A stretch of DNA of 29,955 bases from the NCBI GenBank assembly GCA_002269645.1, contig NIVC01004966.1, positions 1 through 29,955 of the forward strand, written 5' to 3'. The position numbers and the translations under genes are program-made. Below, one piece after another: positions 1 to 23,641 of this stretch (positions are counted from its first letter, which is position 1; every line of letters begins with the position of its first letter). The notes under the pieces are model-generated. The model saw nothing but the letters and a program-made list of their open reading frames with translations. It was not told the DNA's origin and ran no database searches. This stretch comes from Macrostomum lignano (lineage: Eukaryota).

Positions 1-369
1 TTATTATTAAGACTTACTTATTAATTAATTAATGCCAAGACAATGAGAAGCATATGCCTAAGGCTAAGATAGCCTAGCCTAGCCACACTTTAAATCGTAT
101 ATAGTATTTGCCCAAAAAATAAGCAAGCATTGGTCTTGAATGTAACATAGGGCTAACTTTTGTCCCTTAGAATAATCCTATTGTCAAAGGGCTAACCTTT
201 TGTATTTATAAATAATCTCACAATGCCACCAAAGTTGATGTAGGGGTTAGTTCCCTCTATTAATATCTCAGTAATTAGCCACCAAAGTTGTAATAGGCAT
301 GGTTAAACTTCTCTCTATTAATGTACTTTTGTATCAATGTACTTATACCTATTAGTAGTGTCTAGTATA

Positions 370-919
370 GGCAATCCTACACTTCCGTTCGGTAAATTAT
401 TTTGACATTGAATTTTTGAACAGGCGTGGTAAATAACAATGTAACCAAACAAAACTAAAACAGTGGAACATGGTAGCAGTCTGTAGAGCGCATAGTCACT
501 TAGAGTGTGTCTGCAGGTCATTAAGGTGTCTACAATAGATAGTAATGTCCAATCCAGTACAGGATAGCCCAAATGGACATTGGGGATACAGACGACGCCA
601 GAGAAATTCCTCAATGTGTGCATCGAAGAGAGCGTCGCTCGTGCCATGCATGTTGCGGATCTTGCGCTTCGCGTGGGCCCATGTGCCCTCCACGGTGTTG
701 GTGTGGACATGTCTCCATGGCAATGAAGACTGGAAGATATGAGAAATTGAAGCTCAATAATGAGCAGCTCACAAGCAACAGCTCCCTTAAACTGACACCC
801 CTTTAAACTCTGTTCGCTCAAACTTTTGGCCATAGACACATTGCCAATCAACGTCATTTGACTCAGTGGTACGAATTCAAATGTGAAAATAATTTACCGA
901 ACGGAAGTGTAGGATTGCC
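370..919 (-). mobile_element. Merlin (IS1016/ISXO2-like) DNA transposon, internally deleted
   Basis: Perfect 34-bp TIRs: GGCAATCCTACACTTCCGTTCGGTAAATTATTTT at 370-403 and its reverse complement at 886-919; ends start with GG as in Merlin. The interior holds a transposase C-terminal fragment. TSD is degenerate (gtgtct[agt]ata left, gtgtctata right). Confidence 0.85.
496..723 (-). pseudogene. ISXO2/Merlin transposase C-terminal fragment
   Basis: HTNTVEGTWAHAKRKIR..GTS..LF..HIEEFLWRR matches the conserved C-terminal block of IS1595/ISXO2-family transposases (contains the catalytic E); the N-terminal part is missing. Confidence 0.8.
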
Positions 920-1038
920 GTGTCTATACATATACTATACTCTTTGGCCTGAGCGGTCTAATGGCACAGTCTACTCTATTTACTCCTATAAGTTTTCTCT
1001 CAGTCCTTGACCTTGGCATTCCCTAGCCTAGATCAAAG

Positions 1039-1498
1039 CCATAGTCCGGATCATGGCAGGCGTACGCCGGAGTGAAAATTCGTATCTTTTCAATTTTACG
1101 CCGACGTAAAGTTCAAAATTTTTTTATGCCAAGTCAAAAGTTGTTTATACACCAACTTTTTAAAGAATTTGTATTTTTTAAAACTTAAAAATAATTATTT
1201 ACTTGAAAACGGCTGATTTTTTCCAAAAACTAATATTCTTTGTTTTAATTTTGTTTTTCTCGTAAATTTCGTTAATATTTTCTGTTTTGTTAACCGTTTA
1301 TATTCAGAAGAGCTTTGGTTAATTGATATTTAACTACACGATTGCATCAGCCCTGAACTTTTCTATTTCTTGTATGCCAGTTGTTTACACTTCATGTTGA
1401 ACCTGAATATTCTATACGCCAAATGTACGCCAAGATTGTCAGCGAGTGCAAAATTACGCCGGAAAATTCCGGCGTAAAGGCCACCTTCCGGACTATGG
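1039..1498. mobile_element. Non-autonomous hAT-like MITE (element A, CCATAG-TIR family), 460 bp
   Basis: TIRs CCATAGTCCGGATCATGGC (1039) and reverse-complement CCATAGTCCGGAAGGTGGC (ending 1498), 16/19 identical; perfect 8-bp TSD GATCAAAG at 1031-1038 and 1499-1506; subterminal TACGCC motifs. Confidence 0.92.
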
Positions 1499-1873
1499 GA
1501 TCAAAGGTCATAGCCTTATGCATTTTCTTTGCCCTGAGGCCAAGATGGAATTCTTGCACAAAAGTTGTTATGCATTTGTACGTGCTTGTCAAATTTGTTT
1601 GCGCTTGCGCGCTGAAAAGGAGCCTACTTGGGCACTCTTAAAGAAGGTGTGTGCACGCTCCATTGTCCATAGTCAGGAAGGTGTCCAGTGTACGCCGGAA
1701 TGAAAATTAAGAAAAAATGTTGTTTACGCCAAAATTGAAAAGCCCTAAAAAAGCGCTTTTTGACGTATGCCAAAATTGAATAGCCCAAAAAAGCGTACGC
1801 CAAAATTGAGGACCCAAAAAAACGCTGCAATTTACAGATTTAAAATTTATGTATTAATTACCTATTAAAAAGT

Positions 1874-4800
1874 TCATTTGTTTTCAGACAACGATTCTGA
1901 CAGAGACTTATCGGCTCCGACGAACAGACACCGACTACCCTGTTCCCGGCGCCGATCAATCACTTTGCTAGATTCATACTTCTTGCGAGCGTGGGCTTTG
2001 GGGTCGAAGAAGAGTGGTCCACGGTGTTGCCGCAAGCTTCTTTGACTGTCGCCAGTGTAATAAAGTTTCGCAGCTCGTCCCAAGAGTCGCTCATTGGCAC
2101 TGGTACCCACTGGCAGCAGCATCCAGCGCAGCTTCATTCTTACCTCGAGCGTGTCGTTGAGCTGACCGCCGATTTTTTGCTGCGAGCGTATTGTCGCGTA
2201 GTAGGATTCGACAATCACTTCTAAAAAAACGAAAGTTTCCATAATTACAAAGTATTAAAATTCTGCATACCTAAAACTTTTCAGACTAGCTCATGCTCAC
2301 CTGTGCCGCCGCGGTGAAGAGCAAAGTCGAGCAACAGACATGTGGCTTGACCAGCGCGGGAATAAACCGAGGGTCCTTGTAAAAAGCCGCATATACTGCT
2401 GACTCGTTAAGCGTGGCGCAGACAGACTCGCCTGGCTCTGTAGTCAGTCGCAGTCGAAGCGCCAGATCGCCTGACTTGCGGGGTTCCGCAGAGACCTTAA
2501 TAATGCGACCCTGTACAGCAGGTGTGAGCCAGTTATCTCGGCCGTCGCCTGAGATGAATGCCTCGTGAATAGTCGTGATAAAAGCCTCCAAATACTTCCG
2601 TGATAGGGACGACTTCACGTGCGGTGCGAGACGCTCGTGCTTTTCAGCAAGGCGGACGAGGTGCTTCATCTCAACGGCATGAGTTGCATTCTCGACTGCC
2701 TCTTCGATGTCCTCGGCAGTCAACAGGCTAACGGCAGATGCTGCATCCAGGACAATTGACGGATCCCTGACGCAGCATTTCTCCAATCGCGCAAGAAAGG
2801 AGCGGTGCAGGCTTGAAGCCAACTGGACTAGGTCCTGGAGAGAATTATAAATATATATAAGTGCGTTAATACACTAATCATGACATGACAGAAGTTTATA
2901 CTTTTACACAGTAGCGGTGCTAAAACTCAGAGTTAAAAATTACCCGCTCCATATCCTGGGACTCTCGGAGTTGCCAGTCGACCCTGCTGCTTGGCCTACC
3001 GGTGCGTTGGTTGCCTCGAGCGGTCACCGTGGGCTTGTCCGGCAGTACAAGCCATCCGCCCATCAATTCGACCGATTTGAATGAGCCTCCCGGTTTGATG
3101 GACTCATAGAAGGGCTGTAAAAATTGAAGTGAAGTAGGAAAGAAATGAATGCGCAAATTTAAGCCCTTTAAATATAATTTAAGCCCTTACATATAGGCCC
3201 AAATCATTTACCTGCAGTCGTGGGTAATCCTCAACTCGGAAAACCTCTGAGTGATCAGCAAAATGCTTCGCTACCCGATCGGCCAGCACGGAAACCTTCC
3301 AGTGAGGCAACTGGAGGTTCTGAGCCACTTCCATCAGGGAGACTAGTGGACCAAAAAGGTCCTGCAGGCACAGCAAGTCAAAAACGAAGTCGCTTCCGAA
3401 CATTGCATATTGCGACTCTTCGTCATCAGAGCAGCACGGATTTTCTGCTCGAAATGCGGTGTGCAGAGCGGCGTAACTTGCCTCAATGGCGGACCACTGT
3501 CTAAAAAAAGAAGCGTAGTGGGAGGACATTAAATAAATTTTTATTTACGCTTTTCATCACCATTTTTATTAGACTATTTATTGATAAAAAATAGCTGGTA
3601 CTTACTTGATTGCAGAGCTCGTGAAACGCTGGGCTGCGAAATGCGACATCGCTCGAGCTGAACCGTCTGACGCCTCTTTCAGTGCTGCCTCACCACGACC
3701 ATGGCTGAAATAGGTAGCAAAAAAATTCGCTCGCTTTATAAACCGGCGCAATGACTCCCCATCAGGTCCATCGCGAACATCAGTGACGGCCAGATTCAAG
3801 TAGTGTGCCGCATCCCACATCACAGGAATCTTTTCGACGTCATCGACAGGGGCCCCGAGCTCGGTCCGAATAGCGCGGCAGAATGTGCCAGCTTGGTACT
3901 GGCCATCAGCGACGATACCCATGATGCTTGCAGTGGGCGTCTTCAACACCTGATAGATTCAAAATGATGAAATTAAGCACTCGTCTAATTTAAAGTTTAA
4001 AACTGTTAGAATCCCTTCAATCGTCCAAAAAATAATACGTTAGTGACGGTTACCTTAAGTGTCTGCATTAGTCTTTTGGCCAGGGCTTCCCCATCTGCTT
4101 GCATTGCAGAGTCGTACACAGCAGGTGCACCCGCAGGAATCGCTACGGCTTCGCCATTTTCGCAGCGAGCTAGAAGGAGTGCCGCCTGATTCGTTGTGCG
4201 GCCTGGGGTGCTTTTGTCGCAGGTGATGGTCAGCAGAGGCGGCTGTCCAGTCGAAGGCAGAGGACACCGCAGAAACTCTGCACTTTCGTCGTTTACGCAG
4301 GCGTCTAATAACTTCCAAAGTTCTTTGCAGAATGCACTTTGTAAGGAGGGAGGGTAGGTGAAATGACAAAGTTATTATTTATTAAGTATATCTGATTGCA
4401 TTTAAATAAAATTATTTATAGATATGTTTGCAGGTAAACTTACAAGCCATGGCCAATCTGACCAACTTCACAATCAGACGCATCGAGCAGACTCATTAGA
4501 GTCTCGTAATGCGAACCCGCAGCAGCCATTTCAATTGTCGCAATAGCACAGCGGAGAAGGGTGCGCACAACCTTGCCTTGTGCCGTCTGTTGTACGACTT
4601 CGGTTCGGTAGTCCTTCACAGCCGAATAGTGGGTCTTGCTTGTCGAACAGTGGTTTACGAGTTCATTGCGAAATTTGGAGAACTCGTCCACACCACTTAG
4701 CAAACCTGCGACTCGTTCGGCTGAAAGTCGTAGCCCTCTGCTGAAGGACTTATTCTTTTCAGTGGTGGTGGGGTTCCTGGAAAAGTGAAAAGCTCGGTAC

Positions 4801-6977
4801 ATTAACACCTTAAGTACTTCTTTAAGACTATCCCGTCTAAACGGACTCTACATACAGTACATTTAAAAAACATTCGACTTACAGAATGCTGTAGATTTGC
4901 TCGGCTGTACAGTTGGTAGGCATCAGTTTCGACTTGCAGAGGAACGTGACACAGGGAACGCAGTTAAAAATCGAGTCACCATTCTCGCACGACTTGAGCG
5001 AACAAAACTCAAACTGCAGTAACTCAGCGAAACTATTTGTGGCCGCCACATCATCGTTGCCGAGGTCGATTTTGGACTTATTTTCTTGATTGCTGCCCTT
5101 ACTACATTTAGATGTAGCAACAGCATTGACGGATATATTTTCAAGCAGTTTTTTCATCTGCACAATCTCCTGCGTCTGTGACTCGAACGCCTTTTGCAGA
5201 GCAGTGATCTTCTTAGCCATGTTTTCTGGAGCTGGTGCTGAATCAACAGCTTCGAGTCGCAACTGTAGACGACACTGCAGGTCTGTCTGCTGCTGCTGAC
5301 CGGATGACTGCTGCTGACCAGATGACTGCTGCTGACCGGATGACTGCTGCTGACCGGATGACTGCTGCTGATCGGATGACTGCTGCTGATCGGATGACTG
5401 CTGCTGATTGGATGACTGCTGCTGATCGGATGACTGCTGCTGATCGGATGACTGCTGCTGATCGGATGACTGCTGCTGATCGGATGACTGCTGCTGATCG
5501 GATGACTGCTGCTGATCGGATGACTGCTGCTGCTGCTGTTCAGACTGATCAACCTCAGCACTCAAGTCGTCCTCTTCGTCTTCCACAGTAGCTACATTTT
5601 GCAGGGCACGCTCATTCAACAGCCTTCGAACCTCCTGGTTATCTCTTCGAGCGAAATCAGGAGGTGCATGTCCAACACCTTTGCGCCCCTGGTGTTGACT
5701 CTTACAGTGCCGATTAAGATCATGTGGAAGACCACGGACTGTTCGGCAGTTTCGCAAATTTCGACCAGCCCTTAAGCAGGACAAACAGTAGTGCACATCC
5801 TGTGCAATTACTCTTTTGGGTTGCTTGGCTTCTAACTGACTTGGGCCAGAATTACTAACAGACTTTCGCTTGCGATTGTTAGAATTAGAAATAGGCTGCA
5901 GCTGATTTGGGGTTGCAAAAAATCCCCAGCCTTCTTTAAGACCTGTCTTAGGACCAGCTGCCTTTAATGAAGTAGAAGCAGCCGAAAAACCTGTTTTAGT
6001 GAAAGGGTTTTATTGGGGCTACTTAAGGGGTTTAAAATAATGTTGCTATAGAATAGATAGAAAGGGCGGGGATTAATATAATATGGTAATAATGAAAATG
6101 GTCTTGGTCTGATGACTCTGATTTTGAATGCTACATACATTCTACCTACAGGCACAGCCTACAGCTTTGGATTGCATTGCTACATATATACAAAACTAAT
6201 TAACTAACTGTATTGTCTAAGAAAAGTAAGTCAAAAATTTATAATAAGTTAACAATAAAATAAAGTTAAGTATGAGTATGGCAGTATCAGCTATCACCTA
6301 TCAATCACTATCAAATCAATGTATGAGTCAGAGTCAGATCTCATGTAAATAATAGAATGTGAAATTAAACAATATACATACTTTATACTTATTGATGTTT
6401 GACTACACTACACTAAAATAGAACATATACATATATTGGATTTGGATTGGATAAAAACTGGCCTACTTGTCGGAATCTGACAATCAATAACAATAACATG
6501 AATCATCATAAATGAATGACTAGACTTAAGACTTAATGACTAGACTTGTCAATGTTAACAAAAGTATAGGCAAGGCTGTAGCCTGTAGCCTGTACTGTAT
6601 GTATCATGTATGCTATGGGCATGGCTGCATTAGCTGATTAGCATAATATATTTAAAAGCAAAATTTGAGAATCAAGGCTATTCATATTGGTCCCTAGCTC
6701 AATGTTTAATATTCTGTCTAAAATTTATTTTCTTCAGAACTTATAATTTATAATAAAATATAAGAAAAGAATATTGAAAACAGGCAATTAGCAAACAGGC
6801 AGCCAGGCTCAACAGCAACAGGCCACACTTACTAGAATCAATAGCTGAGCTAAGTGAGCTTGAAGTTGAATCCAAAGCTTTATCAATAGCATTGACATTA
6901 TCAGAAGAAACTTCCATCTCCTCGACCTCGTCCTCAGTGTCAGTGTCAGTGACAGTGACAGTGTCACTAGTTTCCAT
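1874..6977 (-). CDS. hAT-like DDE transposase, predicted 9 exons, about 2 frame disruptions
   Basis: Exons predicted from GT-AG sites: 6977-6833 (start and this exon least certain), 5957-4883, 4808-4444, 4336-4054, 3949-3606, 3500-3212, 3114-2944, 2834-2301, 2220-1874. Phases agree except at the exon 2/3 junction and one 1-nt shift near 2355. Motifs: N-terminal C2H2/BED-like finger (CLSC...RHCKSQH), TITCDKST (D1), GIVADGQY (D2), WDAAHYLNLAVTD, QRF, VIVESYY (E). Confidence 0.8.
5293..5535 (-). repeat. 18-bp coding minisatellite encoding (QQQSS[D/N/G]) x13
   Basis: Unit GATGACTGCTGCTGATCG on the + strand; 13 units in frame within the large transposase exon. Confidence 0.95.
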
Positions 6978-7934
6978 TGGTGTTGCAACTTGCAATGGTA
7001 TGGTTAAAGTTTCTGAGCCGATGAGCCTGGCTATATCAACACGACAACACAGTCGAGTCAACACTGAATATTTATATTTCACTTCCTTCCTTGTGGATTC
7101 GATTGTGCTTACAAAGTTACACACAAGTTACACAATAACACAACACAAGTCAAGACAACAAGCGAAGCAATCAGTATATTAGTATATACAAATACAATAA
7201 TAATAGTTGCAAAAATCCAGGAGAGAGAACAGATCAATTTGAATGGTCTGAAGAACGAACTTGAAGAAGACGAACTCGACGACGAAATTGCTAACAAATG
7301 TAATAAAATAAAACTGCAAATTCGCGAAATTTGCAACTTAAATCTTAACTTACCTGTATGTCATCTGTTGTAACGTGAAGAAATCTAAAATACTAAAGTA
7401 ATTATTGTACAGAATTAGTTAATAAGTTAAAATAAATAACTGACTTACACAAAACTTTAGTAAAGTTTTGTTAACAATAAATTAGATTCAAAATTTACGT
7501 AATTTCAGCGTTTTAAAGATGAAAATAGATTTACCAATTCACTAAAATTGAACGATATACAATACTTTGTCGAAGTAATTGGGTTGTTTGCAGGTTTTTT
7601 AAACGTTTGTTCTTACGCCAATCACATGCAAATATTGTAGGCCGATTTTTGGACAGATTTTTGCATGCGAAAACTGTGTTGTGTACGCCAAGAACTCTGT
7701 ACGCCATTTTTCGGACCGCGTGTACGCGAAACTGTACGCCATTTTTTTTGGGGGGGGGGCTGATGTACGCCGGAAAATTCCGGCGTACGGACACCTTCCT
7801 GACTATGGTCCATCGTATGCGCTTGCAAAGAAGCTAGCTGTTTGCCACAAAATCACAGATAGGATTTGACTTTTATATGTATTCAACATGGTTATGTGCC
7901 ATGTAGTGTATACGTGCTCAAATTCTCTTATTTT

Positions 7935-8154: not shown

Positions 8155-8224
8155 CTTTTTTACAACTGGCATGCGCCATAGTCAGGAAGGTGGCCTTTGC
8201 CATGGAAAATTCTGGCATACACAA

Positions 8225-8345
8225 GGGGTCCTTGGCACACAATCATGGCGCACACTGAAGTCCCTGGCGCATGCAGCGCTCAATCATGGCACACACTGAG
8301 GTCCCTAGCGCATGCAGCGCATAATTGCGGCGCATAAGGTCCCTG
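8225..8345 (+). repeat. Subterminal ~41-bp direct repeats of element D
   Basis: CAATCATGGC(G/A)CACACTGA(A/G)GTCCCT(G/A)GCGCATGCAGCGC twice plus a partial copy. Confidence 0.8.
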
Positions 8346-8689
8346 ACATGCATGAAAATTGTAATGCAAATTAACAATTTTATGTAAAACACGCTGTTGA
8401 AACCCGCAGAATTTGAACCCAGGGAATTCCAATCTGAGAAATCTGAAATCTGAGCTGAAACTGAGCCCATACTGAAACAAAAACTTGTTAATAGTTAGTT
8501 AGTAAGATAGAGGTAAACAAAATGGAGTACATTCGCGTACATTTAGAATTTGAGGCAAACATTGATATTGTTGGCTGGGGTGCTTTTTACTTTAAATAGG
8601 CAATTAATGTCTGTCTGACTCTAAAACATGTATTGGCAAACTCTGGCCTCTGCTTCTGACTCTCCCTACATCCATTGGATCCTTTGAAA

Positions 8690-10543
8690 CTTCTATCTTC
8701 TCTTCTGTTTCCTCTCTTCTCTCTCGTCCCTCGTCTCTCCTCTCTGAGCTCTCTCTCCTCTCCTCTCTTCTCTTTTTTCCTCTCTCCTCTCTCCCCTCTT
8801 CTCTCGTATCTTCCCTCATTTCTCTTCTTTTTCATCTCTCTTATCTCATCTCTTTTCTCTTCTTTTCTCTTTCCTCTCCTCCCACTCTTCTCTTGTCTTT
8901 TTCTTCACCTCTCTTCTCTCTCGTCTTTATTTGCTCTCTGATCTCTCCTTTCTCTTCTCTTTTATCTCTTTTCATTTCTCTCTGCTTCCTCCCTCTCTCT
9001 CTGCTTCCCCCCTCTCTGCTTCCCCCCTCTCTGCTTCCCCCTCTCTCTCTGCTTCCCCCTCTCTGTCTGCTTCCCCCCTCTCTTTATCTCTCCTCTCTTA
9101 TCTTTCTTCTCCTCTCTACTCTCTCCCTTCCATTCTCTTTTCTCTCCTCTCGCCTCACTCACTTCTCTCTCCCTTTGTCTCTCCTCTCGTCTCTATAATC
9201 TCTTCTCTCTTATCTCTCCTCTGTTCTCTGTTCTCTCCCATCTCTCGTCTGTTCATTTTCGTCTCTGCTCTCAGCTCACCCCCCTCTTTCATCTGTCATC
9301 TTTACTGTCTTATATGTTCTCTCATTCTGTCCTATGTACTCTTTTCTTTCACCTCTTTTGTCTCCTCACTTTCCTTTCTTCTTTCTTATCTTCTCTTCTC
9401 TTCCCTCTTCTATATACTCTCTCCCTCTCTTGTCTCGTCTCTTCTCTCTCCACTTCCCTCCTTTATCTCTCATTTCTCCTCTTTACTAACTCCTCTCTGC
9501 TCTTCTCTCTGCTCTCCTCTCATCTGCAGCTCTCTACTCTCTCCTCTCTACTCGCTCCTCTACTCTCCTCTCTACTCGCTCCTCTCTACTCGCTCCTCTC
9601 TACTCGCTCCTCTCTACTCTCTCCTCTCTACTCGCTCCTCTACTCTCTCCTCTCCACTCGCTACTCTACTCTCTCCTCTCTACTCGCTCCTCTACTCTCT
9701 CCTCTCCACTCGCTACTCTACTCTCTACTCTTTCCTCTCTTCTCGCTCCTCTACTCTCTCCTCTCCACTCGCTACTCTACTCTCTACTCTCTCCTCTCTA
9801 CTCGCTCATCTACTCTCTCCTCTCCACTCGCTCCTCTACTCGCTGATCTACTCTCTCCTTTCTACTCGCTCCCCTCTTCATTCTCCTCTTTCCTCTTCTC
9901 TCTCCTCACTCACTTCTCTCTCCCTGTCTCTCCTCTCTCCTATCTCTTCTCTCTTATCTCTCCTCTGTTCTCTCTACTCTCCCATCTCTCGTCTGTTCAC
10001 CCTGATCTCTGCTCTCTCATCTGTCATCTTTACTCTCTTATACGTTCTCTCACTTATCTCCTCTGTACTCTTCTCTTTCACCTCTTCTGACTCCTCTCTT
10101 TCCTTTCTCCTTTCTCCTCTTCTATTCTCTTCTATACTCTCTCCCTCTCTTGTCTTCTCTCTTCTCTCTCCACTCTCTCCTCCTTTATCTCTCTTATCTC
10201 ACTTGTCATCTCTCCTTCGTCTGTTCACTCTCATCTTTGCTCTCTCATCCCCCTCGCTCTTCTGTCATCTTTACTCTCCTCTTTCCTGTGTACTCTTTTC
10301 TTTCCCCTCTTCTGACTCCTCTCTTTCCTTACTCCTCTCTTCTTTTCTCTTCCCTCTTCTATACTCTCTCTCTTCTCTATTATCTTCTCTCGTCTCTCTG
10401 CACTCTCCTCTCACCTTTTTAATCTCTCATCTTTACTCTCTCATCTCTCCTTTCATCTGTCTCATCTCTACAATCTTATCTCTTTCCTCTCTCCTCCTCT
10501 TCCCTTTACTCTATCATCTCTCCTTTCTTCTCTCTTCTTTCTC

Positions 10544-10622
<79 letters not shown>

Positions 10623-11070
10623 CTCTTATCTCTTTTCTCATCTTCTCACTCATCTCTCTCTCATCTCTTATCTCCTCTTCTCACTCCTCTCTCTCCCCCT
10701 CTCTCCCCCTCTTATCTCCTCTCTTCTCTATCATTTCAAATCTCTCCTCTCGATCCTCTCTCATCTACCTCTCTGTTCTCTCATCTCTTCTCACTCTTCT
10801 CTACTCTCCTCTCTCATCGATCCTCTGTCTCTTCTCTCCCCTCTTCTCTCTGCATCTTCTCACCTCTACTATTTCATCTCGCCTCTTCTCTCCATCTTCT
10901 CACCTCTACTATTTCCTCTCCCTCCTCTCTCCCCTCCTCTCGCTTCTTCGTCCCGTATTCTCTGCTCTCTCCTTAACCCCCTCGTACGTCTCTCCTGTTA
11001 TCATCTATCTTTTCTTTTACCCCCCTCTCGCCCCTCCTCCCTTTCTAATAGTCTATTCCTTTTCCTTTTT
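8690..11070 (+). repeat. ~2.4-kb CT-rich low-complexity array with internal duplications
   Basis: The + strand is almost all C/T. Sub-blocks: CTCTGCTTCCCCC(CT) units ~8985-9080; CTCTACTCGCTCCT-type units ~9530-9870; related blocks at ~9150-9380, ~9903-10110 and ~10215-10330; pure (CT)n ~10547-10620. Confidence 0.95.
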
Positions 11071-11699
11071 ACTCTGATCTGGGCTGCAGCCATGAGCTGG
11101 ATTCTTTATCTGCATGGCATTTGAGATAAAAATCTGTCGATCCCCGCTTCGAAAGCCAGTTTGTGGGACGTAGTACTATAGTACTATATAATGTTAAAAT
11201 TTTCATGGTGTAACTAATTTAGTAGGATTGCATTGTAATTAGTTTATTCATTAATTTTTCGCTATTTTTACAAACCATCCCACATAGCCTTGATTTGCCA
11301 TCCTTGTTTAACTGCTGCGACTTGTCTATACAGAGGACAGTAGTTTGAATCTCTCGCTAAACTCTCTCCTTCCCACACGCCTCTCCACTCGCGGGGGTAC
11401 AGAGAAGGCTATTAAAAAGTTATTCCAAAACACTGTACACTCGCTATGTACATTGAGCCCTATCGCCTGACCCTTCGTCTGAGCTGGGGAAATGAGTGAA
11501 AGAGCGGCACAAACAACAGAAAAAGCAGACAAACTTCACATGCTTACAGTTTGCGTCCTGTTTGAGATACAGAGTTGAGACTTTGCATTTAGACAGAATG
11601 AATCAAAGAAGAATTGTGTTAAGTTAGAAATCAATCGCTTCACGTGGAGCAAACTTATAGCAGCTGAAAGTTAGTCAATTTTAAAACCCTTTTACACAT

Positions 11700-12084
11700 C
11701 TGGGCCCAGATCGGGAAAGAGAGGCAGGCGGGCGGAGGTTGGGGTGGCTGTCTCGCTGAAAAAACAGCCTAACTTTAAAAGTGCACAACACCGCTCAGGA
11801 TTAACTTTTAGACTCGAAATTTTACATGATTGTGCCAAAATAGTTTAAGATTATCTGTGTCAAATTTGAAGAGAATTGGTAGAAGTGGAGCGGCGCCATG
11901 GAGGATTAAGTGAAAAAATTGCGCATTTTGAGCAGTTTTTTGTACTTTTAGGCAGGAAGACTTGAGTCTAGGAAATTTAAAGGTAGCCTAAGACATTCTC
12001 GGTAGTAAGTTTAGGGTGGGTGTAAAGTTTGGTGTAATTTGGTTGAGTGGTTTGGGAGTCCATAGCGATCAAATTTGTACACAG

Positions 12085-12117
<33 letters not shown>

Positions 12118-12140
12118 GAGTTTTGATTTATATGTAGAGA
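11700..12140 (-). mobile_element. Non-autonomous Helitron-like fragment (5' end) with (CA)n microsatellite
   Basis: The + strand ends ...ACACAGAC(AC)nAGACAGAGTTTTGATTTATATGTAGAGA|T, i.e. A|TC on the minus strand, the layout of Lep1-type non-autonomous Helitrons. No CTAG 3' end found; left boundary approximate. Confidence 0.5.
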
Positions 12141-12359
12141 TAAAGGAGATTTGTATAGTCTAGAAAGTCAGTGGTAAACTTTTTGCTTCTTTAAAATTAA
12201 TAGTAAATAAAATTAGTATAAATTATCGCTAAGGATGTCAATTTTGCATTACTCCAATTGTAGGTATAGTTTAAGTTTGTTTAAAATGAAATTATTGTGT
12301 AAAATTTTAAAAAGGCTTTTCGTATGAAGGCCTTTCTTAGAAAACTCTACTCGTGAAGA

Positions 12360-12410
12360 GTGGCGCACAGACAGCGCACAAATGGCGCATAGACAGCGCA
12401 CAAATCGTCC
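12360..12410 (+). repeat. 22-bp subterminal direct repeat of element D
   Basis: TGGCGCA(C/T)AGACAGCGCACAAA twice. Confidence 0.8.
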
Positions 12411-12527
12411 CAAAAATTATTCCGGCGCACACTGTGCCACCTTCCTGATTATGGGGCGTGCGCACTTGCGCGCTGCTCCAAAAATATGCGCGCGCATTTT
12501 CCTACCCCGAGCAAGAATTCCATCCTG

Positions 12528-12612: not shown

Positions 12613-13771
12613 ATTCTCGCTCTTAGCAGTTTCTGATACTCCCAATGAGGGGCTTAATACTCTAGAAAATGAGTAAGGCTTTTTGAATACTGCAATCTAG
12701 CAAATATATTCAGAGCAAGTTATTTAGCTTGCAGAACTGTAATACGAAGGAAACAAGTTAACACAATTTATTTTTCTTGGCCTCTTCTAGGCTCCTATTT
12801 ATACTTAAGTCTAAGATTTATTATTTTTTCAAACAAAAAATATTTGTGACAAATATTTTTATAACTCACAACATTTAAACAAAAGATAAATTATTTGTTT
12901 TTTAGTGTGTATTTTAAATAGAGTTTTCTAAGAAGCATAAAAATAAGTAAACTATTAGAACTATTATATAGTATTATACTATTATTAATGCACTCTCACT
13001 ATCAATGTCATAAATGTTATAACAATGCTAATTGCTCTTACTAATAAATGTCCTACAACTGTCACCAAGTTGTGCTAGGGTAATACCTAGCATAGGTTCT
13101 CCTATGGATAGTTAATGTACTTTTGTATGTACTTTTACTTTTTCTACTGGTATCATATCAGTTTCTAACAGTTTCTAATAGTAGTATGGCACGAGATGTT
13201 TGCAAAGAGGACAAGGGCATGATACTACCATAGGCCACAAGATTGGTCGCCGCTGTAATATAGCTTACCAGCTCGATCAAGTACTCGTAGCTGCTTATAT
13301 GGATTAGTCCCGATAGGTGGCACCATCCATTGTAACTTTGCGCATTTGCAGCGTCTCGTTATTCTGACAGCTAGGCATCTGCTGGGAGCACATTGTCACT
13401 TAAAATGACTTAATAATTGCCTGTGAAAAAATGAATTATGCATACAATTTTTACATAACTGAAACCAATATTAACAATACAACTAATGGTTTGAAATAAG
13501 CCATATAGGTACACTGTATCATCTGTGCCGCACCCGCCACGATGCAAAGTGTAGTCCAACAACAAGCATGCTGCCTTTCCAGCATGCTCAAATACCTGTG
13601 GCTTGCTGTAAAACAAGGCGTATACAGCTTTTTCGTTCAACTGACTCCTGAACGACTTTCCTAACTTTAGCATTATGAGAAGCCAAAGGTCCAAGTCTCT
13701 GGGTTTTGGGTCTTCACATTGGACTTTTTTGACTTGGCCTTGGACATCAGGCTCTAACCAACCGTCGCGCC

Positions 13772-14028
13772 TGTTGTGCATGGACTTTTGGTTTAGCAAA
13801 CGCACTAATGCTTCCCTTCTTTTGTCTATAGTCTAGGGTACAATCTTTTATTTCTTTAAGAGCCGAAGGTTAACAGTATAACAAAGGGCAAGCAAGACGT
13901 GCGCCGGCTAGAGGCAAATAAAGCTTGTGAACAGCTCGTATTTTAAATAATGCTTCGACTTGACTTTGATGTCAGATGGTAGCCTGGAGGCAATAGGCGG
14001 TATAGAAGCAGAAGAAAAGGACATAACA
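13772..14028 (+). repeat. 5' LTR (257 bp)
   Basis: TGTTGTG...ACATAACA, direct repeat of 15984-16242. Confidence 0.95.
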
Positions 14029-14913
14029 ATGGCGACGAGTGTAAAAATCGGAGAGTTCGACGTGGCTAAACCGGAGCAATGGGAAGCTTATAAAGAACAA
14101 CTCGAGCAGTTTCTCGTCGTAAACAAAGTGACCGAGGAGGCACATAAGTCAGAAAATATGATTACAGTGATTAGTAATGACTGCTATCAATTGCTCCGCA
14201 ACCTGCTGTCACCAAAGAAGCCCAAGGATGTGAACTTCGACGATCAAGTCAAGGCCCTGGGGGAGCATTTTAACCCAAGGCCTAAGATCGTTGTCGAGAG
14301 ATTCAACTTCCATAGCAGAGCCCAACATGAAGGAGAAAATGTGAGCAATTTCATCGCAAGTCTGCGGAAGTTGGCTGCCACGTGTGGTTTTAATGAATTC
14401 TTGGACGAGGCACTGAGAGACAGGTTCGTTGTCGGCCTAAGGAATCGCCTGACACAGCAGCGTCTGTTGCAAGAAGACACACTGACACTAACTGGAGCAC
14501 TTACTCTTGCGACTGCGATAAAAGCAGCGTAAAGAGGTGTGGTGACAATTTTGTCAACCGGTGCAATCCAGGCGGTGAAGTCTTCAAGAGCCAGTAAAAA
14601 TCTGACAGACGGCTTGTCAGAGAAGAACAACAGAAATAATCAATCTGGATGCTTCCGCTGCAATGCACAAGATCACTGGGCAAAGAACTGCCCCTACCGT
14701 AGCAAGACGTGCAGCAAGTGCGGTCGAGTGGGACATAAAAGTGATGCCTGCCGCACAAAGGACAGGACTAAAGATTCCGGAGGTGGAAAGCAAAAGAAAC
14801 TCAGCTCGTCCAGACATAAGAGACACGGCAGAGTGCACTATGCACTAGTTCAACCAGCTCAGACAGCAGGGACTCAAACTGTACGAGTCAGGGACACCAC
14901 AGGGGTGCTTTGA
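14029..14913 (+). pseudogene. gag: Gag with two CCHC zinc knuckles, premature stop at 14530-14532
   Basis: MATSVKIGEFD...WEAYKEQLEQFL...VVERFNFHSRAQHEGENVSNFIASLRKLAATCGF...LRDRFVVGL; same frame continues past the stop to CFRCNAQDHWAKNC and CSKCGRVGHKSDAC. Confidence 0.92.
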
Positions 14914-14920
14914 AGTCACA

Positions 14921-15965
14921 GTGTGCTCGACTGGACAGGTCGCGCATGTCACTTCTCCACCATACGAGTGCGAACTGGAACTGAACGGAAAAGCTGTAAG
15001 ATTTCAAGTGGATACTGGTGTGGATAAAACCCTGATCAACGAGAAGACCAGCAAGCAACTTGGCCTGAAGCTTTCAAGGACTACCATAAGGTTGTCCAGC
15101 TACACGGATCACTCAATCCCAGTATTAGGTGATGCAACAATTGACGTGGTTAGCCACAACGTCAGGCTTTACCAATTGCCTGTACTGATGGCAAAGGAGA
15201 ACGAGTAAATCAGCTTGAACGCGACTGGCTTTCTAAGATCAAGATTGACTGGGACAAGTTTGCGAGTGTGAACGTGACCACATTAGTCCAGCCTATAGAT
15301 CTATTGGTAAGGAGGCATGAGCAAGTGTTTGCTGAGACATTGGGAACCATTGAAGGATTGAAGGCCAATATAGTGCTGAAGGAGAATTCAATACCAAAGT
15401 ATTTCAAAAGTCGGCCAGTTCCATTTGCAATCAAAGGTCTCATTGAGGACGAGCTCAAGAGTTTGCAAGCCCAAGGAATCATCACGAAGGTGAAGCATCG
15501 GATTTCGCATCGCCAATCGTTCCTGTTCTCAAGCGCGATGGAAAATCAGTGAGGCATGAGTTCCAGGAGGGAGAAAAACTTCTGACGCTTGATTTCAGAA
15601 GGGAGAAAGAGAACAGATGGATTCCTGCCGAGGTGGTCACCCGCACAGGACCAATGTCTTACAGACTGCAGGTCAACGGGCAAATCTGGAAGAGGCACGT
15701 TGATCAAATTGTCAAGACAGACGTTCTTCCCACCCGAATTCCACCAATCATGAAGAGGCATCAGGACGATCAGACTGACTTGGCTCGTGAGCAAATGCAG
15801 AGTGAGGACATCTCAAATCCAGCAGCCCAAAGCGTGCCCGTGCAGGACGAACCACAGACAACCGACTCAGACGGAACTCGTGGCAAGAGCACTGACACAT
15901 CGGCTAAAGAACCTAGACGACTAAGGGACAGAGACAAATTGCAGAAACCGGACCGGTTGAGATAA
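14921..15965 (+). pseudogene. pol: Pol remnant: aspartic protease, RT N-terminus, integrase C-terminus
   Basis: FQVDTGVDKTLI (protease); VFAETLGTI...RPVPFAIK..IEDELKSL..QGII...ASPIVPVLKRDGKSVR (RT start) fused to HEFQEGEK...WIPAEVVTRTGPMSYRLQVNGQIWKRHVDQI (integrase C-terminus). Confidence 0.9.
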
Positions 15966-15983
15966 TAATTAACAAAGGGGGAA

Positions 15984-16242
15984 TGTTGTGTATGGACTTT
16001 TAATTTAGCAAATGCAATAATGCTTCCCTTCTTTTGTCTATAGTCTAGAGTACAATCTTTTATTTCTTTAAGAGCCGAATGCTAACAGTATTACAAAGGG
16101 CAAGCAAGACGTGCGCCGGCTAGAGGCAAATAAAGCTTGTGAACAGCTCGTATTTTAAATAATGCTTCTTCGACTTGACTTTGATGTCAGATGGTAGCCT
16201 GGAGGCAATAGTCGGTATAGAAGAAGAAGAAAGGACATAACA
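15984..16242 (+). repeat. 3' LTR (259 bp)
   Basis: Direct repeat of the 5' LTR, preceded by purine tract AACAAAGGGGGAA. Confidence 0.95.
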
Positions 16243-18169
16243 GCGGCCTTCACTAGGCATGAAGGAGTGGTGAATCGTCATTATAAATGACTCTGTGTAC
16301 TTTCGAGCCAGCGTCTCTCAAAGTATAGATTTCTTGCGCTGTGAAGCTAGACGTACGAGCTGCTGCATCTCAGGAGCGTTAATCTTGCCTTCCACCACTT
16401 CATCTAAATTTTCAGTGGCCAGAAGGCAGATGGCATTAGCCACATCCATGGCAAAAGACGGATCCCGCTTTAGACATTTTTCCATATGTGCCAAAAATGA
16501 GCAGTGGAGTGCTGCGGCCAAATTTATGATGTCTCATAAAGGCAGCAGAAGAAGCAGTATTTTGATTTAAAATAACAAACCATGCACACTCGACTTTTGC
16601 CACAGTTACAAATGATTCTACTATTTGCCTGTTCGACATCTTGGGGATCACAGAGACGCCAAGTAAAATTGCTGCCAAGTAAAGTCCGTGGGGTGTTTCT
16701 AGTGCACACCTGTGGTATTTGGCTGGACAATCCAGCCCTCAAGCAGCTTCATGGACTTATAGGACCCTCCAGGTAGGATTGACTGATGGCATGCCTGAGT
16801 TGCAATGAAGTGCGAAGGACACAATAATGATCAAGCTCTCATAAAACTATTCCATTTAAATTGTAATACAGTATATGAATTTTACCTGAAGTCGCAGATA
16901 GTCTTCAACACGGAAGGTTGTAGACCAATCGAGTAGAAACTTCGCGACTTGGTCGACCAGCAGGGACACCTTCCAGTGCGACATCTGAAGGTCCTGTGCG
17001 ATTTCCATTAGTGATACGATCGGCTTAAACAGGTCTTGCAGACAACAAGTCGAACACAAAATTGCTGCTGAACATCGCATACTGAAGTTTCTCATCATCA
17101 GAGCATCTGAGATTCTCTGTGCGAAACGCTTTGTGAAGCTTGTAATAGGACTCGTCCACTATCTGTGAAGGAGAATTGCATGTATACTTAAAATATGTTC
17201 GTCATGATGTAGTGCCTGTATGCGGCAATTATTTAAAAAATTGCACACTTTTTATATCTTTTGTTACTATCAACAAATTAATGAATCAATATACTAACTT
17301 CACTGCAGAGCTCGTGAATCGCTGGCTCGCGAAATGGGACATCGCTCGAGCTTTTCCATCATCAGATGCAGCTTCTAATGCGCCGTTACCGCGACCATAG
17401 CCAAATAAGCTTGCAAAATAGTTTGCATAGCTTCAATGCAGACTCGAACTGCCGACCTTCTGCTTAGCCTATGCTTGTTATTGCCTGTCTACAGCAATTC
17501 AGTAATTCTTGAAATTAGCTATTCCTTCTAATCCCGCAAAACAGACAGTCATACTAATAACAGCCTGCAGTTATCCACTTTGCCGTCTACAACTTTCATT
17601 AACATCTGCAAAATACAATAATTCATTCAGCAGTCTGCAGTTATTATCCACTAAAACTCTGTAAATAGTTATCCCATCGGAAGTTTGCAGCTATACACTC
17701 ATAAGTCTTGAGGAACAACCTCAGCAGTTTTTCGTTTTTCAACTTGGCAGTCTAAATGAATGATCCCTTCGACAATCTGCAGTTCTCCTCAGCAACCTGC
17801 TGAGGAGAAACAACAATTCTCATTCTCAGCAGTCTGCAGTTTTCCTCTTTGCTGGCCCCTCAGTATCCTCAGGAAGCTGCAATGATCCTTTCAATAATTG
17901 TACGGCTCATTATATAATCAATTTTCGATAGATATTGGCAGTCTTTTGCACATCAATGCAACGAAGATTTTGCATCGTCTGCAATTTAGCGATTAGTCCA
18001 GGCAGGCACAAGCTACAAATAAATGAAAATTAATTTATTATACGCGTATTTTATCTCCCACGTGCATAAACTGAAGCTTGCAAATATTTAATTATTTATA
18101 GCTCGTAGCATCAGCTCAAGAAGTTAAAGTTTAGTCTATGGCCATAAACGTATTATTATTTTTTGAGCT

Positions 18170-19074: not shown

Positions 19075-20141
19075 TTAATATACATATGTATATATAAGTA
19101 CCCGTTGCGCTCCACAGCGGATAACAACTCGACGCATCCGGTCGATATGCGGCTGCATCGACGCTGGGAATTCAAATGCAAGCACGTCGTCAGCTGCGGT
19201 GTCAGTAATGTCCATAGTTGAGCTATTAGCTAGCGGTAGAAATTGGGTGCTGCTCTCGGACTCTTCGTACCAGGTTTTCAGATCTTGAGCAGTGTCGTGA
19301 ACAGGCGAATACGAAATAGTTGATGATGAGCAACCAAGACAAAGCGAGCCGGCGTACTCTTGAATCTTGGCTTTTCTAATGGCGACTACGTCTCCTGGTC
19401 TCCACAAATGTACCTGGGTAGCAGAGGCGTCCCAGAAGTTGCAAAAAGTCTGAAAACCAGATTTGTCTACGATGCAGACTTTTGCGAGCTGCACCAACTT
19501 TCCGGAACGCGTGTTGACGTCAACGGGTTGTTCTACTTTGACAATGACACCGAGAACATCAACAAAACTGAAAATATAAAGAATGAAAATGTGTGAAGTA
19601 TATATATCTTCCTGTTTATTCTACATTTTGAGGATGGACTTACCCATTCACTCCAATTCTTGGTAGTTCGGAGAGCGCTTTGAACGGACCATTTATGGGA
19701 ACTATCGCATCGCTACACTGGCGGAGAGAGTCCTTGTTATCCTCATTGATTGACAGAGTAACTTCATGCATATTGCTTGTTCGGTTGAATTTTGGATTAG
19801 CACACTTTACCATTCCTTCACGGATGGAGATTGTTTGCCCGTTTTCGCAAATGCTCCAGTGTTCTTGCAACTCATCGCCAAAAACTGCCACTCTGATTTC
19901 ACCTGACTCATCTGACATCAAAAACGAAAACCATTTGTTCTTCTTGCCATCCCTAATCTGGTTTAGTAAAAAACGATGTTGTTTAAGTGGATTGATTTTA
20001 TAAAAAAAGTATATATATGAAGCAAAATAGCAAATTATGGAAGCTTACCTCAGTTCTTAACGAAGTAATTCCGGAGACTACGCCGCGCATGGGACCGACA
20101 GAAAGAGAAGAAATCGTTAACTTGCTTAGCTTGCTTGCCAT
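19075..20141 (-). CDS. Helitron-borne RPA70 (RPA1)-like ssDNA-binding protein, two OB folds, spliced
   Basis: Phase-consistent exons 20141-20049, 19957-19644, 19567-~19102 (possible small exon from 19009 to a stop near 18971). FSFLMSDESGEIRVAVF..., CANPKFN, FVDVLGVIVKVEQPV, CNFWD, GDVVAIRKAKIQEYAGSL, AQDLKTWY resemble RPA70 DBD-A and DBD-B. Confidence 0.85.
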
Positions 20142-20393
20142 CTTTTAACATAACGATGAAGACAAATTTAATGGAATTTACTACTTGCAGCTATAAATTC
20201 ATCTTAAGCTAGAAATGCATCTCAAGCTTATGCATTCCGCGAAAAATACAGTTTCAGGACACACATTTTCTCATAGACGTTTTGCGTGACAGCATGCACT
20301 TTCAATATTTAATCGTGGCTCGTAGTAAAATAGCAACATATTTTTTTACATTGAATTGTAAAAAATTATTAATAGATAATAAAGACGTCCAAT

Positions 20394-23300: not shown

Positions 23301-23641
23301 GATCATATTTGTCTGGTGTAACTCGATACTGAGGTGCCAACCAAAGAAGAATGTGCACGTGTGGAAGGCCACGCTTCTGGTACTCCAATGCGCAGACATG
23401 CGCTTGAACTTCGCCGAAATTAGTTTTTAGCCGTTTGAGTAATTGAGCGAACACGCGCGGCATCTAACCTGTCAGACCGTGCACTTATGGATTCGTTCTG
23501 TATACGCTTCCGACTATACTCTAGTTGTTTCTCAAGCCGCGAATTACGCTCCTCCGCTGTTTCCTGCCGACGACGCAATTTTGCTTCCCGACTCTTTACT
23601 AACTCACTCTTTCGCTTCCTCTTCGGCATGAGCGACAGCAC
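20394..23641 (-). pseudogene. Helitron RepHel (HUH endonuclease + PIF1-family helicase), frameshifted and internally deleted
   Basis: EYQKRGLPHVHILLW (HUH), GYPFYRRR, DNRWVVPYN, KYIIKY (catalytic Tyr motif), FYLRLLL, DAPAGTGKT, ASSGIAA, IVWDEISM, GDFRQLLPV, TIHKAQGQSL, HGQLYTALSR. One 81-nt intron at 21150-21230; at least 5 frame breaks. Confidence 0.93.

What the first reader, a model, noticed from the sequence alone, without database searches (positions are those of the whole stretch)
1667..7808. Atypical hAT-like family: CC-start TIR, DxxH in place of CxxH, RF in place of RW, 8 introns
The 8-bp TSD and D-D-E spacing point to hAT, and DKST / DG / HxLNLAVxD resembles KIAA1586/ZNF862-type hAT proteins. 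However, the TIR begins CCATAG rather than the usual (C/T)A(A/G), the motif after D2 is WDAAH, and the conserved RW reads QRF. The gene is unusually intron-rich for a DNA transposon. It may be an undescribed hAT lineage, with its MITEs next to it.
Basis: partly seen in the sequence, partly recalled or inferred. Interest (0 to 1): 0.7.

Follow-up and report, generated by a model that had tools for sequence, protein, structure and literature searches.

The report
Divergent hAT-type DNA transposon copy
This is a 6.1-kb cut-and-paste DNA transposon, with smaller relatives beside it, whose enzyme folds like known hAT transposases but is too divergent for standard domain models to detect; this copy carries one frameshift.

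Summary
Window 1667-7808 is a DNA transposon. It has perfect 20-bp terminal inverted repeats (CCATAGTCAGGAAGGTGTCC) and an 8-bp target-site duplication (7 of 8 bases match). Its minus-strand gene has nine exons and eight GT-AG introns and encodes about 1,184 aa with DKST, ADGQY, WDAAH, QRF and VES motifs.

Two non-autonomous relatives with the same ends and 8-bp duplications flank it, at 1039-1498 and 8176-12454. A decayed paralogue lies at 13204-17426.

No Pfam hAT model matches the window protein or any of its 53 aligned relatives. Three other lines still place it in the hAT superfamily:
- An AlphaFold model of a 44%-identical relative (pLDDT 88) matches only the Hermes transposase strongly (Foldseek E 4e-6, probability 1.0).
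- Profile-profile alignment to canonical TTF-finger/DUF4371 hATs gives 81-84% probability, with every catalytic motif in register. Canonical hAT families score about the same against each other.
- A Macrostomum lignano relative has the same ends and a perfect 8-bp duplication.

About 1,170 sequence clusters exist, all unnamed, from flatworm, crustacean, tunicate and jellyfish. I rate it a new variant of a known kind. I could not check Repbase or Dfam.

The parts
1659..1666 (.). Left target-site duplication, TCCATTGT
   Evidence: Matches 7809-7816 (TCCATCGT) at 7 of 8 bases.
1667..1686 (+). Left terminal inverted repeat, CCATAGTCAGGAAGGTGTCC
   Evidence: Perfect 20-bp inverted repeat with 7789-7808. 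The 17-nt probe finds 5 sites against 0.05 expected.
1687..1830 (+). Left subterminal region with TACGCC motifs and three roughly 30-bp repeats (TACGCCAAAATTGA...)
   Evidence: Repeat family D17. 16 of the window's 21 TACGCC sites lie in the ends of this element and of the MITE, against 5.3 expected window-wide.
1874..2220 (-). Exon 9, carrying the catalytic Glu (VIVES, E1074 at 2209-2207) and the stop codon
   Evidence: It aligns with the tER.FS block of canonical hATs.
2301..2834 (-). Exon 8, with a frameshift between 2370 and 2369
   Evidence: The frame changes from f0 to f2. Copy 2 and P0001/P0002 read straight through.
2944..3114 (-). Exon 7
   Evidence: GT-AG boundaries; junctions bridged by homologues.
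3212..3500 (-). Exon 6, part of the helical insertion domain (G.DF..DL motif)
3606..3949 (-). Exon 5: second catalytic Asp (ADGQY, D638 at 3907-3905), WDAAH (D669, H672) and QRF (R731, F732)
   Evidence: The motifs are conserved across the family.
4054..4336 (-). Exon 4: first catalytic Asp (TCDKST, D569 at 4218-4216)
4444..4776 (-). Exon 3, the helical region upstream of the catalytic core; it holds the two conserved His of the CxxC...H...H motif
4883..5990 (-). Exon 2: BED-like C-x2-C-x22-H-x4-H finger (5787-5692), QQQSSD repeat, and the CxxC of the TTF-like finger (4962-4951)
   Evidence: The CxxC aligns with the TTF finger of RAHAT-type hATs.
5236..5586 (-). 18-bp tandem repeat, about 14 copies, encoding (QQQSSD)n within exon 2
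   Evidence: Repeat family D6; translation.
6833..6977 (-). Exon 1, with the proposed start codon at 6977-6975. This is the only exon not supported by homology.
   Evidence: The N-terminus is variable among relatives.
7614..7788 (+). Right subterminal region with six TACGCC motifs and the palindrome TACGCCGGAAAATTCCGGCGTA
   Evidence: The 22-mer is identical to MITE 1455-1476 (family D20).
7789..7808 (-). Right terminal inverted repeat
7809..7816 (.). Right target-site duplication, TCCATCGT
1039..1498 (.). 460-bp MITE of the same subfamily, flanked by a perfect 8-bp TSD GATCAAAG (1031-1038 and 1499-1506)
   Evidence: Its ends are 79-91% identical to the ends of the autonomous element over about 44 bp.
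8176..12454 (.). 4.3-kb non-autonomous element with the same TIR but GGCGCA-type subterminal repeats; TSD GGCATGCG/GGCGTGCG (8168-8175 and 12455-12462)
   Evidence: Its right end is 91% identical over 46 bp to the M. lignano element in L001.
13204..17426 (-). Decayed, 5'-truncated paralogue of the transposase gene (34-56% aa identity, with stop codons), interrupted by an LTR-flanked insert at 13772-16242

Best explanation
Window 1667-7808 is one copy of a formerly autonomous class II (cut-and-paste) transposon. It belongs to a deeply diverged lineage of the hAT superfamily.

Inferred mechanism, by analogy with Hermes and Kat1:
- The ~1,184-aa transposase recognises the 20-bp CCATAG... terminal repeats and the subterminal TACGCC repeats through its N-terminal zinc fingers. 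One finger is BED-like (C117/C120/H143/H148). The other is a TTF-like CxxC...H...H motif.
- An RNase-H-like DDE core (D569, D638, E1074), interrupted by a large, mostly helical insertion domain, nicks the ends.
- The double-strand break is completed through a hairpin on the flanking DNA. H672 of the DxxH motif and F732, the aromatic residue in place of Hermes W319, would assist this step.
- The element is inserted at cuts staggered by 8 bp, which produces the 8-bp duplication.

What is shown:
- the ends, the duplications and the gene structure;
- the motif conservation across the family;
- the Hermes-like fold;
- the collinearity with canonical hATs.

What is inferred: DNA binding by the fingers, the hairpin chemistry, and the roles of individual residues.

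This copy has a frameshift in exon 8, so it cannot make full-length enzyme. Like the neighbouring MITE and the 4.3-kb element, it could move only if intact copies elsewhere supply transposase.
For: Ends and duplications:
- Perfect 20-bp TIRs and an 8-bp TSD here.
- 8-bp TSDs on three more family elements: MITE GATCAAAG (8/8), element 8176-12454 (7/8), and M. lignano L001:9421-15438 GACATCAA (8/8). All share the same 17-21-nt terminus.
- Subterminal TACGCC repeats are concentrated in the ends.

Gene:
- Nine exons, eight GT-AG introns, exon GC 52% against intron GC 31%, and junctions bridged by homologues.

Fold:
- AlphaFold2 model of the 44%-identical relative P0001: pLDDT 88.2, pTM 0.82.
- D1 sits on strand 1, D2 follows strand 4, and E sits on a helix after a long helical insertion.
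- The top seven Foldseek PDB hits are all Hermes transposase (E 4e-6 to 2.5e-5, probability 1.0, target TM 0.42-0.59). The next hit is at E 8e-3.

Profile-profile comparison:
- HHalign of the family against TTF-finger/DUF4371/Dimer_Tnp_hAT transposases gives probability 81-84%, E about 1e-5, with up to 598 aligned columns.
- D1, D2, [C/D]xxH, R[W/F], the catalytic E and the upstream CxxC...H...H are all in register.
- Canonical RAHAT-type against Ac-type hATs score about the same, 81-94%. An IS256-like sequence scores 0.1% and a reversed template 0.5%.

Conservation: D, D, WDxxH, RF and E are 82-95% conserved across the family.
Against: - No Pfam hAT model (zf-BED, DUF4371, Dimer_Tnp_hAT) matches the window protein or any of the 54 sequences aligned, even at E up to 10.
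- Profile searches of PDB sequences do not reach Hermes.
- The HHalign probability is below 95%, and against Ac-type hATs it is only 1.7%.
- The terminus CCATAG does not fit the hAT consensus (T/C)A(A/G)NG (PMC6027215).
- The four TSDs do not show the T2/A7 preference reported for Hermes (PMC8721813).
- The model is of a relative, not of the window protein itself.
- No transposition or expression data exist.
Confidence: 0.85

Rival explanations
1. The family is already catalogued, for example in Repbase or Dfam as one of the minor hAT groups or a Macrostomum repeat family. In that case the element is an ordinary member of a described lineage. This rival concerns novelty, not what the element is.
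For: The family is large and widespread: 1,169 clusters at E<=1e-3, in at least four animal phyla. Repeat curators have had many chances to meet it. The M. lignano genome has been repeat-annotated.
Against: Every named database protein is 'uncharacterized' or 'hypothetical', or is named after a fused unrelated domain. No Pfam coverage exists. One described minor group that I could check, hATx, carries the standard zf-BED and hAT dimerisation Pfam domains, unlike this family (PMC8721813). Literature searches turned up no description.
Confidence: 0.35
2. The element belongs to a different superfamily that carries the C/DxxH signature (P, MuDR/MULE, Kolobok, Dada), or to a new sister superfamily, and only resembles hAT.
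For: DxxH rather than CxxH, the absence of any Pfam hAT domain, and a non-hAT terminal sequence. P elements also make 8-bp duplications (my own knowledge). The C/DxxH signature is shared by five superfamilies (PMC9587614).
Against: Foldseek returns only Hermes at high confidence. The IS256-type transposase ISCth4 scores E 1.4e-2, and no P-element transposase appears in the top 50. An IS256-like sequence scores 0.1% in HHalign, while a canonical hAT aligns end to end, including its TTF finger and the C-terminal E block. The TSDs are 8 bp, not TTAA or 9-10 bp.
Confidence: 0.08
3. The gene is a domesticated host gene derived from a hAT transposase, and is no longer a mobile element.
For: Some relatives (the P0073 cluster) are single intronless 1,222-aa ORFs on metagenome contigs with no obvious terminal inverted repeats. 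An eight-intron structure looks like a host gene.
Against: This copy has perfect TIRs, a TSD, subterminal repeats, MITE derivatives with perfect TSDs, a frameshift, and a second decayed paralogue in a TE-rich region. These are the marks of a transposon family, not of a conserved single-copy gene.
Confidence: 0.03

Closest known systems
Hermes transposase / hAT superfamily (hobo, Ac, Tam3)
   Same: 8-bp TSD, short TIRs and subterminal repeats. An RNase-H-like DDE core split by a large helical insertion domain. D1-D2 spacing is 69 aa here, against 68 between Hermes D180 and D248 (numbering from PMC6027215). Hermes is the only strong structural match.
   Different: About 9% sequence identity. Asp replaces Cys of the CxxH motif, and Phe replaces W319 of the R-W pair. 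D2-to-E spacing is about 436 aa, against 324 in Hermes, with extra beta elements in the insertion domain. The terminus is CCATAG rather than (T/C)A(A/G)NG. No Pfam hAT dimerisation domain is detectable.
TTF-finger / DUF4371 / Dimer_Tnp_hAT transposases (plant RAHAT, 'ZMYM1-like'; from my own knowledge also the source of human KIAA1586 and ZNF862)
   Same: Best profile-profile match: 81-84%, E about 1e-5, collinear over about 600 columns. It includes a CxxC...H...H finger upstream of the core, D-[KE]-[SA]-T/R after the first Asp, DG after the second, xxH-LxLA, and the C-terminal E..[FY]S block.
   Different: The Pfam models PF14291, PF27073 and PF05699, which hit those proteins, hit none of this family. 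The motifs are WDxxH rather than HCxxH, and RF rather than RW. The distance is comparable to that between recognised hAT families.
Kat1 (Kluyveromyces lactis domesticated hAT transposase)
   Same: A very divergent hAT protein with a BED finger and the DDE, CxxH and aromatic residues. Experiments on it show that the xxH motif is needed for hairpin formation and that the Trp is dispensable (PMC4763223). This makes an F-for-W change plausible in an active enzyme.
   Different: Kat1 keeps CxxH and Trp. It is a host gene, not a mobile element.
P, MuDR, Kolobok and Dada superfamilies
   Same: They share the C/DxxH signature between the second Asp and the Glu (PMC9587614). P also makes 8-bp duplications (my own knowledge).
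   Different: No structural or profile support here. Kolobok makes TTAA duplications.

Membership tests
hAT superfamily | 8-bp target-site duplication | tested here: met
   Four elements: 7/8, 8/8 and 7/8 in the window, and 8/8 in M. lignano L001.
hAT superfamily | Short terminal inverted repeats (about 10-25 bp), often with subterminal repeats | tested here: met
   Perfect 20-bp TIR. TACGCC subterminal repeats.
hAT superfamily | TIR begins with (T/C)A(A/G)NG (Rubin et al. 2001, as cited in PMC6027215) | tested here: not met
   The terminus is CCATAG in all six ends seen. If shifted by one base, CATAG fits 4 of 5 positions, but the perfect 8-bp TSDs place the extra C inside the element.
hAT superfamily | DDE RNase-H-like core with a large all-alpha insertion domain; Hermes-like fold | tested here: met
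   AF2 model, pLDDT 88. The top seven Foldseek hits are all Hermes, probability 1.0. This was tested on a 44%-identical relative, not on the window protein.
hAT superfamily | CxxH motif after the second Asp | tested here: not met
   The motif is WDAAH. Asp is 95% and His 86% conserved in the family. The His, an active-site residue in Hermes (PMC4763223), is kept. C/DxxH is the wider signature (PMC9587614).
hAT superfamily | R-W pair (Hermes R318/W319) | tested here: not met
   The motif is QRF. Arg is 90% conserved; the next residue is Phe in 88% of members and Tyr in the rest. An aromatic residue is kept. It aligns with the RW of canonical hATs.
hAT superfamily | C-terminal hAT dimerisation domain (Pfam PF05699) | tested here: inconclusive
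   No Pfam hit in 54 members. HHalign does align GGxEAIVESFYS with the STAxtERxFS block of PF05699-bearing proteins.
hAT superfamily | N-terminal BED-type zinc finger | tested here: inconclusive
   A C-x2-C-x22-H-x4-H pattern is present and shared with relatives. There is no zf-BED Pfam hit. Two relatives weakly match zf-C2H2_12, below the cut-off.
hAT superfamily | Detectable profile similarity to canonical hAT transposases | tested here: met
   81-84%, E about 1e-5 against the TTF/DUF4371 type. This is comparable with the 81-94% between canonical families. Controls score 0.1-0.5%.
hAT superfamily | Excision through a hairpin on the flanking DNA | not testable with these tools
   Needs biochemistry or excision-footprint data.
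Ac or Buster families of hAT | Target preference nTnnnnAn (Ac/Hermes) or nnnTAnnn (Buster); Arensburger et al. 2011, from my own knowledge, and Hermes T2/A7 in PMC8721813 | tested here: not met
   The TSDs are GATCAAAG, TCCATTGT, GGCATGCG and GACATCAA. None fits either pattern, but four sites are too few to define a preference.
P superfamily | P-element/THAP9-like transposase fold with a GTP-binding insertion domain | tested here: not met
   No P-element transposase appears among the top 50 Foldseek PDB hits. No THAP Pfam hit.

The most novel reading that the evidence does not exclude
This is a previously unrecognised major clade of the hAT superfamily, as distant from the TTF/DUF4371 group as that group is from Ac. 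It would be defined by a WDxxH/RF catalytic signature, a conserved CCATAG terminus and an enlarged insertion domain. It would be spread across Metazoa (Cnidaria, Platyhelminthes, Crustacea, Tunicata), invisible to current domain models, and possibly still active in Macrostomum.
Probability: 0.4. Interest if true: 0.6.

Novelty: new variant of a known kind. Interest (0 to 1): 0.45.

Why it matters
Standard annotation recognises hAT elements through Pfam domains such as Dimer_Tnp_hAT and DUF4371. A family of more than 1,000 sequence clusters in at least four animal phyla escapes all of those models. Its proteins are therefore labelled 'uncharacterized' or mis-named after fused domains.

Defining the family would improve transposon and gene annotation in flatworm, crustacean, tunicate and cnidarian genomes.

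It would also show which hAT hallmark residues can change: Cys of CxxH to Asp, and Trp319 to Phe. That bears on the hairpin mechanism.

The near-intact copies with perfect ends in Macrostomum, a transgenesis model, could be a starting point for an endogenous gene-transfer tool.

Tried and rejected
- Pfam scans of the window protein, of 14 individual relatives and of all 54 alignment members found no transposase domain.
- Profile searches against PDB sequences gave only chance hits.
- The scan of bacterial and archaeal genomes found no relative, as expected for an animal element.
- The second word-indexed protein search, using the family profile, returned only three family members and no distant Pfam-annotated relatives.
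- I looked for TIRs around relatives in Hyalella (L002) and on metagenome contigs (L003, L004). None was convincing, and the CCATAGTC terminus occurs only in the M. lignano locus.
- Literature searches for a description of this lineage or of Macrostomum hATs found nothing relevant.
- I considered that the frame problem at the exon 8/9 junction was a wrong splice site. I rejected this because no alternative GT or AG restores the frame, and copy 2 and the homologues read through the shifted stretch.
- I considered a 9-bp TSD with a CATAG terminus. I rejected it because of the perfect 8-bp duplications of the MITE and of the M. lignano element.
- The source organism was not identified. The best protein match is only about 52% identical, but the 46-bp end of element 8176-12454 is 91% identical to an M. 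lignano element. That suggests Macrostomum or a close relative.
Full report
**1. What is in the sequence**

The window is AT-rich eukaryotic DNA packed with mobile elements. At 1667-1686 the sequence CCATAGTCAGGAAGGTGTCC is repeated as a perfect reverse complement at 7789-7808. Directly outside lie TCCATTGT (1659-1666) and TCCATCGT (7809-7816), an 8-bp duplication with one mismatch. A 17-nt probe for the terminus finds five sites in the window where 0.05 are expected by chance.

Those sites, plus a more degenerate sixth at 1039, delimit three elements:
- the 6,142-bp element of the finding;
- a 460-bp MITE at 1039-1498 with a perfect duplication GATCAAAG;
- a 4,279-bp non-autonomous element at 8176-12454 with GGCATGCG/GGCGTGCG.

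The subterminal 150-200 bp of the large element and of the MITE carry 16 of the window's 21 TACGCC hexamers, against 5.3 expected window-wide. They also share an identical 22-nt palindrome. The 4.3-kb element has the same terminus but GGCGCA-type subterminal repeats, so it belongs to a second subfamily.

**2. The gene**

I found nine exons on the minus strand, with eight canonical GT-AG introns of 80-109 bp plus one of 842 bp. Exons are 52% GC and introns 31%. Seven of the eight junctions are crossed without a gap by homologous proteins. The first exon is supported only by its open frame and splice signals.

Two of the intron positions, near aa 529 and aa 1070, coincide with breaks in the Macrostomum relative's gene. 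The others do not.

The joined exons do not give one open frame, because exon 8 changes frame between 2370 and 2369. I first suspected a wrong splice site. No alternative site restores the frame, and the decayed second copy in the window (13204-17426) and three database homologues read straight through this stretch: AVYA.FY.DP.V..RAG.A.CLLLDF.LHR.G. As sequenced, the copy carries a frameshift.

With an X at that point the conceptual product is 1,184 aa. In order it contains:
- an acidic N-terminus;
- a C-x2-C-x22-H-x4-H finger;
- a (QQQSSD)n tract encoded by an 18-bp tandem repeat;
- a CxxC...H...H motif;
- TCDKST (D569), VADGQY (D638), MWDAAHYLNLAV (D669, H672), AAQRFTSS (R731, F732);
- a long helical region;
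- GGTEVIVESYY (E1074).

**3. Relatives**

The word-indexed search of 5.8 billion proteins found only four hits, all from the flatworm Macrostomum lignano, at 41-51% identity. An exhaustive profile search of 1.84 billion cluster representatives found 1,169 proteins at E<=1e-3 and 85 at E<=1e-30.

Those with names come from M. lignano, the amphipod Hyalella azteca, the tunicate Styela clava and the jellyfish Sanderia malayensis. All are 'uncharacterized', 'hypothetical', or named after unrelated domains fused by gene prediction.

Across 54 aligned sequences, these residues are 82-100% conserved: the CxxC...H...H, DK.T, DGQY, WDxxH, RF..S, G.DF..DL and E....E. So Asp in place of the usual Cys, and Phe (or Tyr) in place of Trp, are family traits and not accidents of this copy.

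**4. Is it hAT?**

By the standard test the answer is no. No Pfam model of any transposase matches the window protein, 14 relatives scanned singly, or all 54 alignment members, even at E up to 10. Family profiles also do not reach Hermes among PDB sequences.

Three independent lines say yes.

(a) Structure. An AlphaFold2 model of the core of P0001 (44% identical to the window protein) is confident, with pLDDT 88.2 and pTM 0.82. It has the first Asp on a beta strand, the second just after the fourth strand, and the Glu on a helix that follows about 400 residues of mostly helical insertion. Its top seven Foldseek matches in the PDB are all Hermes transposase chains (E 4e-6 to 2.5e-5, probability 1.0, target-normalised TM 0.42-0.59). 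The next match is at E 8e-3, the IS256-type ISCth4 is at 1.4e-2, and no P-element transposase is listed.

(b) Profiles. I took canonical hAT sequences from the supplement of PMC6027215 and gathered 120 relatives of one of them, Mt_RAHAT. All carry PF14291 (DUF4371) and most also PF27073 and PF05699 (Dimer_Tnp_hAT). HHalign of the family against this group gives 81-84% probability at E about 1e-5. In the permissive mode the alignment runs over 598 columns. The upstream CxxC...H...H falls on the TTF-type finger, DKST on DEarD, DGQY on DGAS, WDxAH on HCxAH, RF on RW, and VES on tER. As a yardstick, the RAHAT-type and Ac-type hATs score 81-94% against each other. An IS256-like transposase scores 0.1% and a reversed template 0.5%. 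Against Ac-type hATs alone the family scores only 1.7%, although the motif register is still correct.

(c) Element architecture. Duplications are 8 bp in four of four elements, TIRs are short, and subterminal repeats are present.

I conclude that the family belongs to the hAT superfamily. It is roughly as far from that group as recognised hAT families are from one another.

**5. The Macrostomum locus**

The contig that encodes P0004 holds a 6,018-bp element (L001:9421-15438). It has a perfect 21-bp TIR, CCATAGTCAGGAAGGTGGCAG, a perfect 8-bp duplication GACATCAA, GGCGCACA subterminal repeats and a multi-exon gene.

Its first 17 terminal bases are identical to the window's, although the proteins are only about 45% identical. 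So the unusual CCATAG terminus is conserved in the lineage. The last 46 bp of window element 8176-12454 are 91% identical to this element's end. That suggests the window comes from Macrostomum or a close relative, but I did not identify the source.

**6. How atypical are the atypical features?**

- The terminus does not fit (T/C)A(A/G)NG (PMC6027215). CATAG would fit 4 of 5 positions, but the perfect duplications put the extra C inside the element.
- DxxH is within the C/DxxH signature that hAT shares with P, MuDR, Kolobok and Dada (PMC9587614), so it is unusual for hAT but not for the wider group.
- In Hermes, H268 of the motif lies in the active site. In Kat1 the CxxH double mutant nicks DNA but cannot form hairpins, whereas the Trp equivalent to W319 is dispensable (PMC4763223). 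Keeping His and an aromatic residue is therefore compatible with activity.
- The D2-to-E spacing of about 436 aa is longer than the 324 aa in Hermes. The model shows extra beta elements in the insertion domain.

**7. Mechanism**

The mechanism set out as the best explanation is inferred from hAT biochemistry. Nothing here tests activity. This copy is disabled by its frameshift. Its perfect TIRs and nearly perfect duplication suggest a fairly recent insertion.

**8. Novelty and limits**

Neither Repbase nor Dfam is available here, so I cannot exclude that curators have already named the family; I put that at about 35%. One minor described group I could check, hATx, has the normal Pfam domains and is therefore different (PMC8721813).

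I rate the finding a new variant of a known kind, of moderate interest. It is a real, widespread, unannotated hAT lineage with altered hallmarks, but not a new kind of element.

Noticed in passing
window 13772-16242: A 2.47-kb insert with ~258-bp direct terminal repeats (94% identical, TG...CA ends) and flanking GCGCC/GCGGC. It looks like a small LTR-type (TRIM/LARD-like) retroelement that interrupts the decayed second transposase copy.
   Followed up: partly
window 19075-23463 (minus strand): Helitron-like coding region: an RPA-like OB-fold ORF (19075-19497), PIF1-type helicase ORFs (20394-22007) and a Rep-like ORF with GLPHVHILLW (23128-23463).
   Followed up: no
window 26719-28279 (minus strand): Three overlapping ORFs that resemble another DNA-transposase family (CDAPAR...GHSGYSGCMYC motif). 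Not classified.
   Followed up: no
window 8690-11000: About 2.3 kb of strongly strand-biased CT-rich low-complexity repeats (GC skew down to -0.86) inside the non-autonomous element 8176-12454.
   Followed up: no
window 359-930: 51-nt inverted repeats (88% complementary) 470 bp apart. This is probably an unrelated MITE.
   Followed up: no
TSDs at window 1659-1666 and 8168-8175, and L001 9413-9420: Three of the four family duplications have CAT at positions 3-5 (TCCATTGT, GGCATGCG, GACATCAA). This may be a target preference, but four sites are too few to judge.
   Followed up: no
window 5236-5586: An 18-bp tandem repeat (about 14 copies, up to 97% identical) encoding (QQQSSD)n in the N-terminal part of the transposase. 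Relatives lack it.
   Followed up: partly
L003 6543-10211; L004 551-4219: Distant relatives (P0073 cluster, 1,222 aa) are single intronless ORFs on metagenome contigs with no recognisable TIRs. They may be domesticated copies, or elements with different ends.
   Followed up: partly
window 24691-24925: A tandem array of alternating 32- and 28-bp units (60-bp period, about four periods).
   Followed up: no
L001 6828-6839: A third CCATAGTC-type terminus lies upstream of the M. lignano element, so another family member sits nearby.
   Followed up: no
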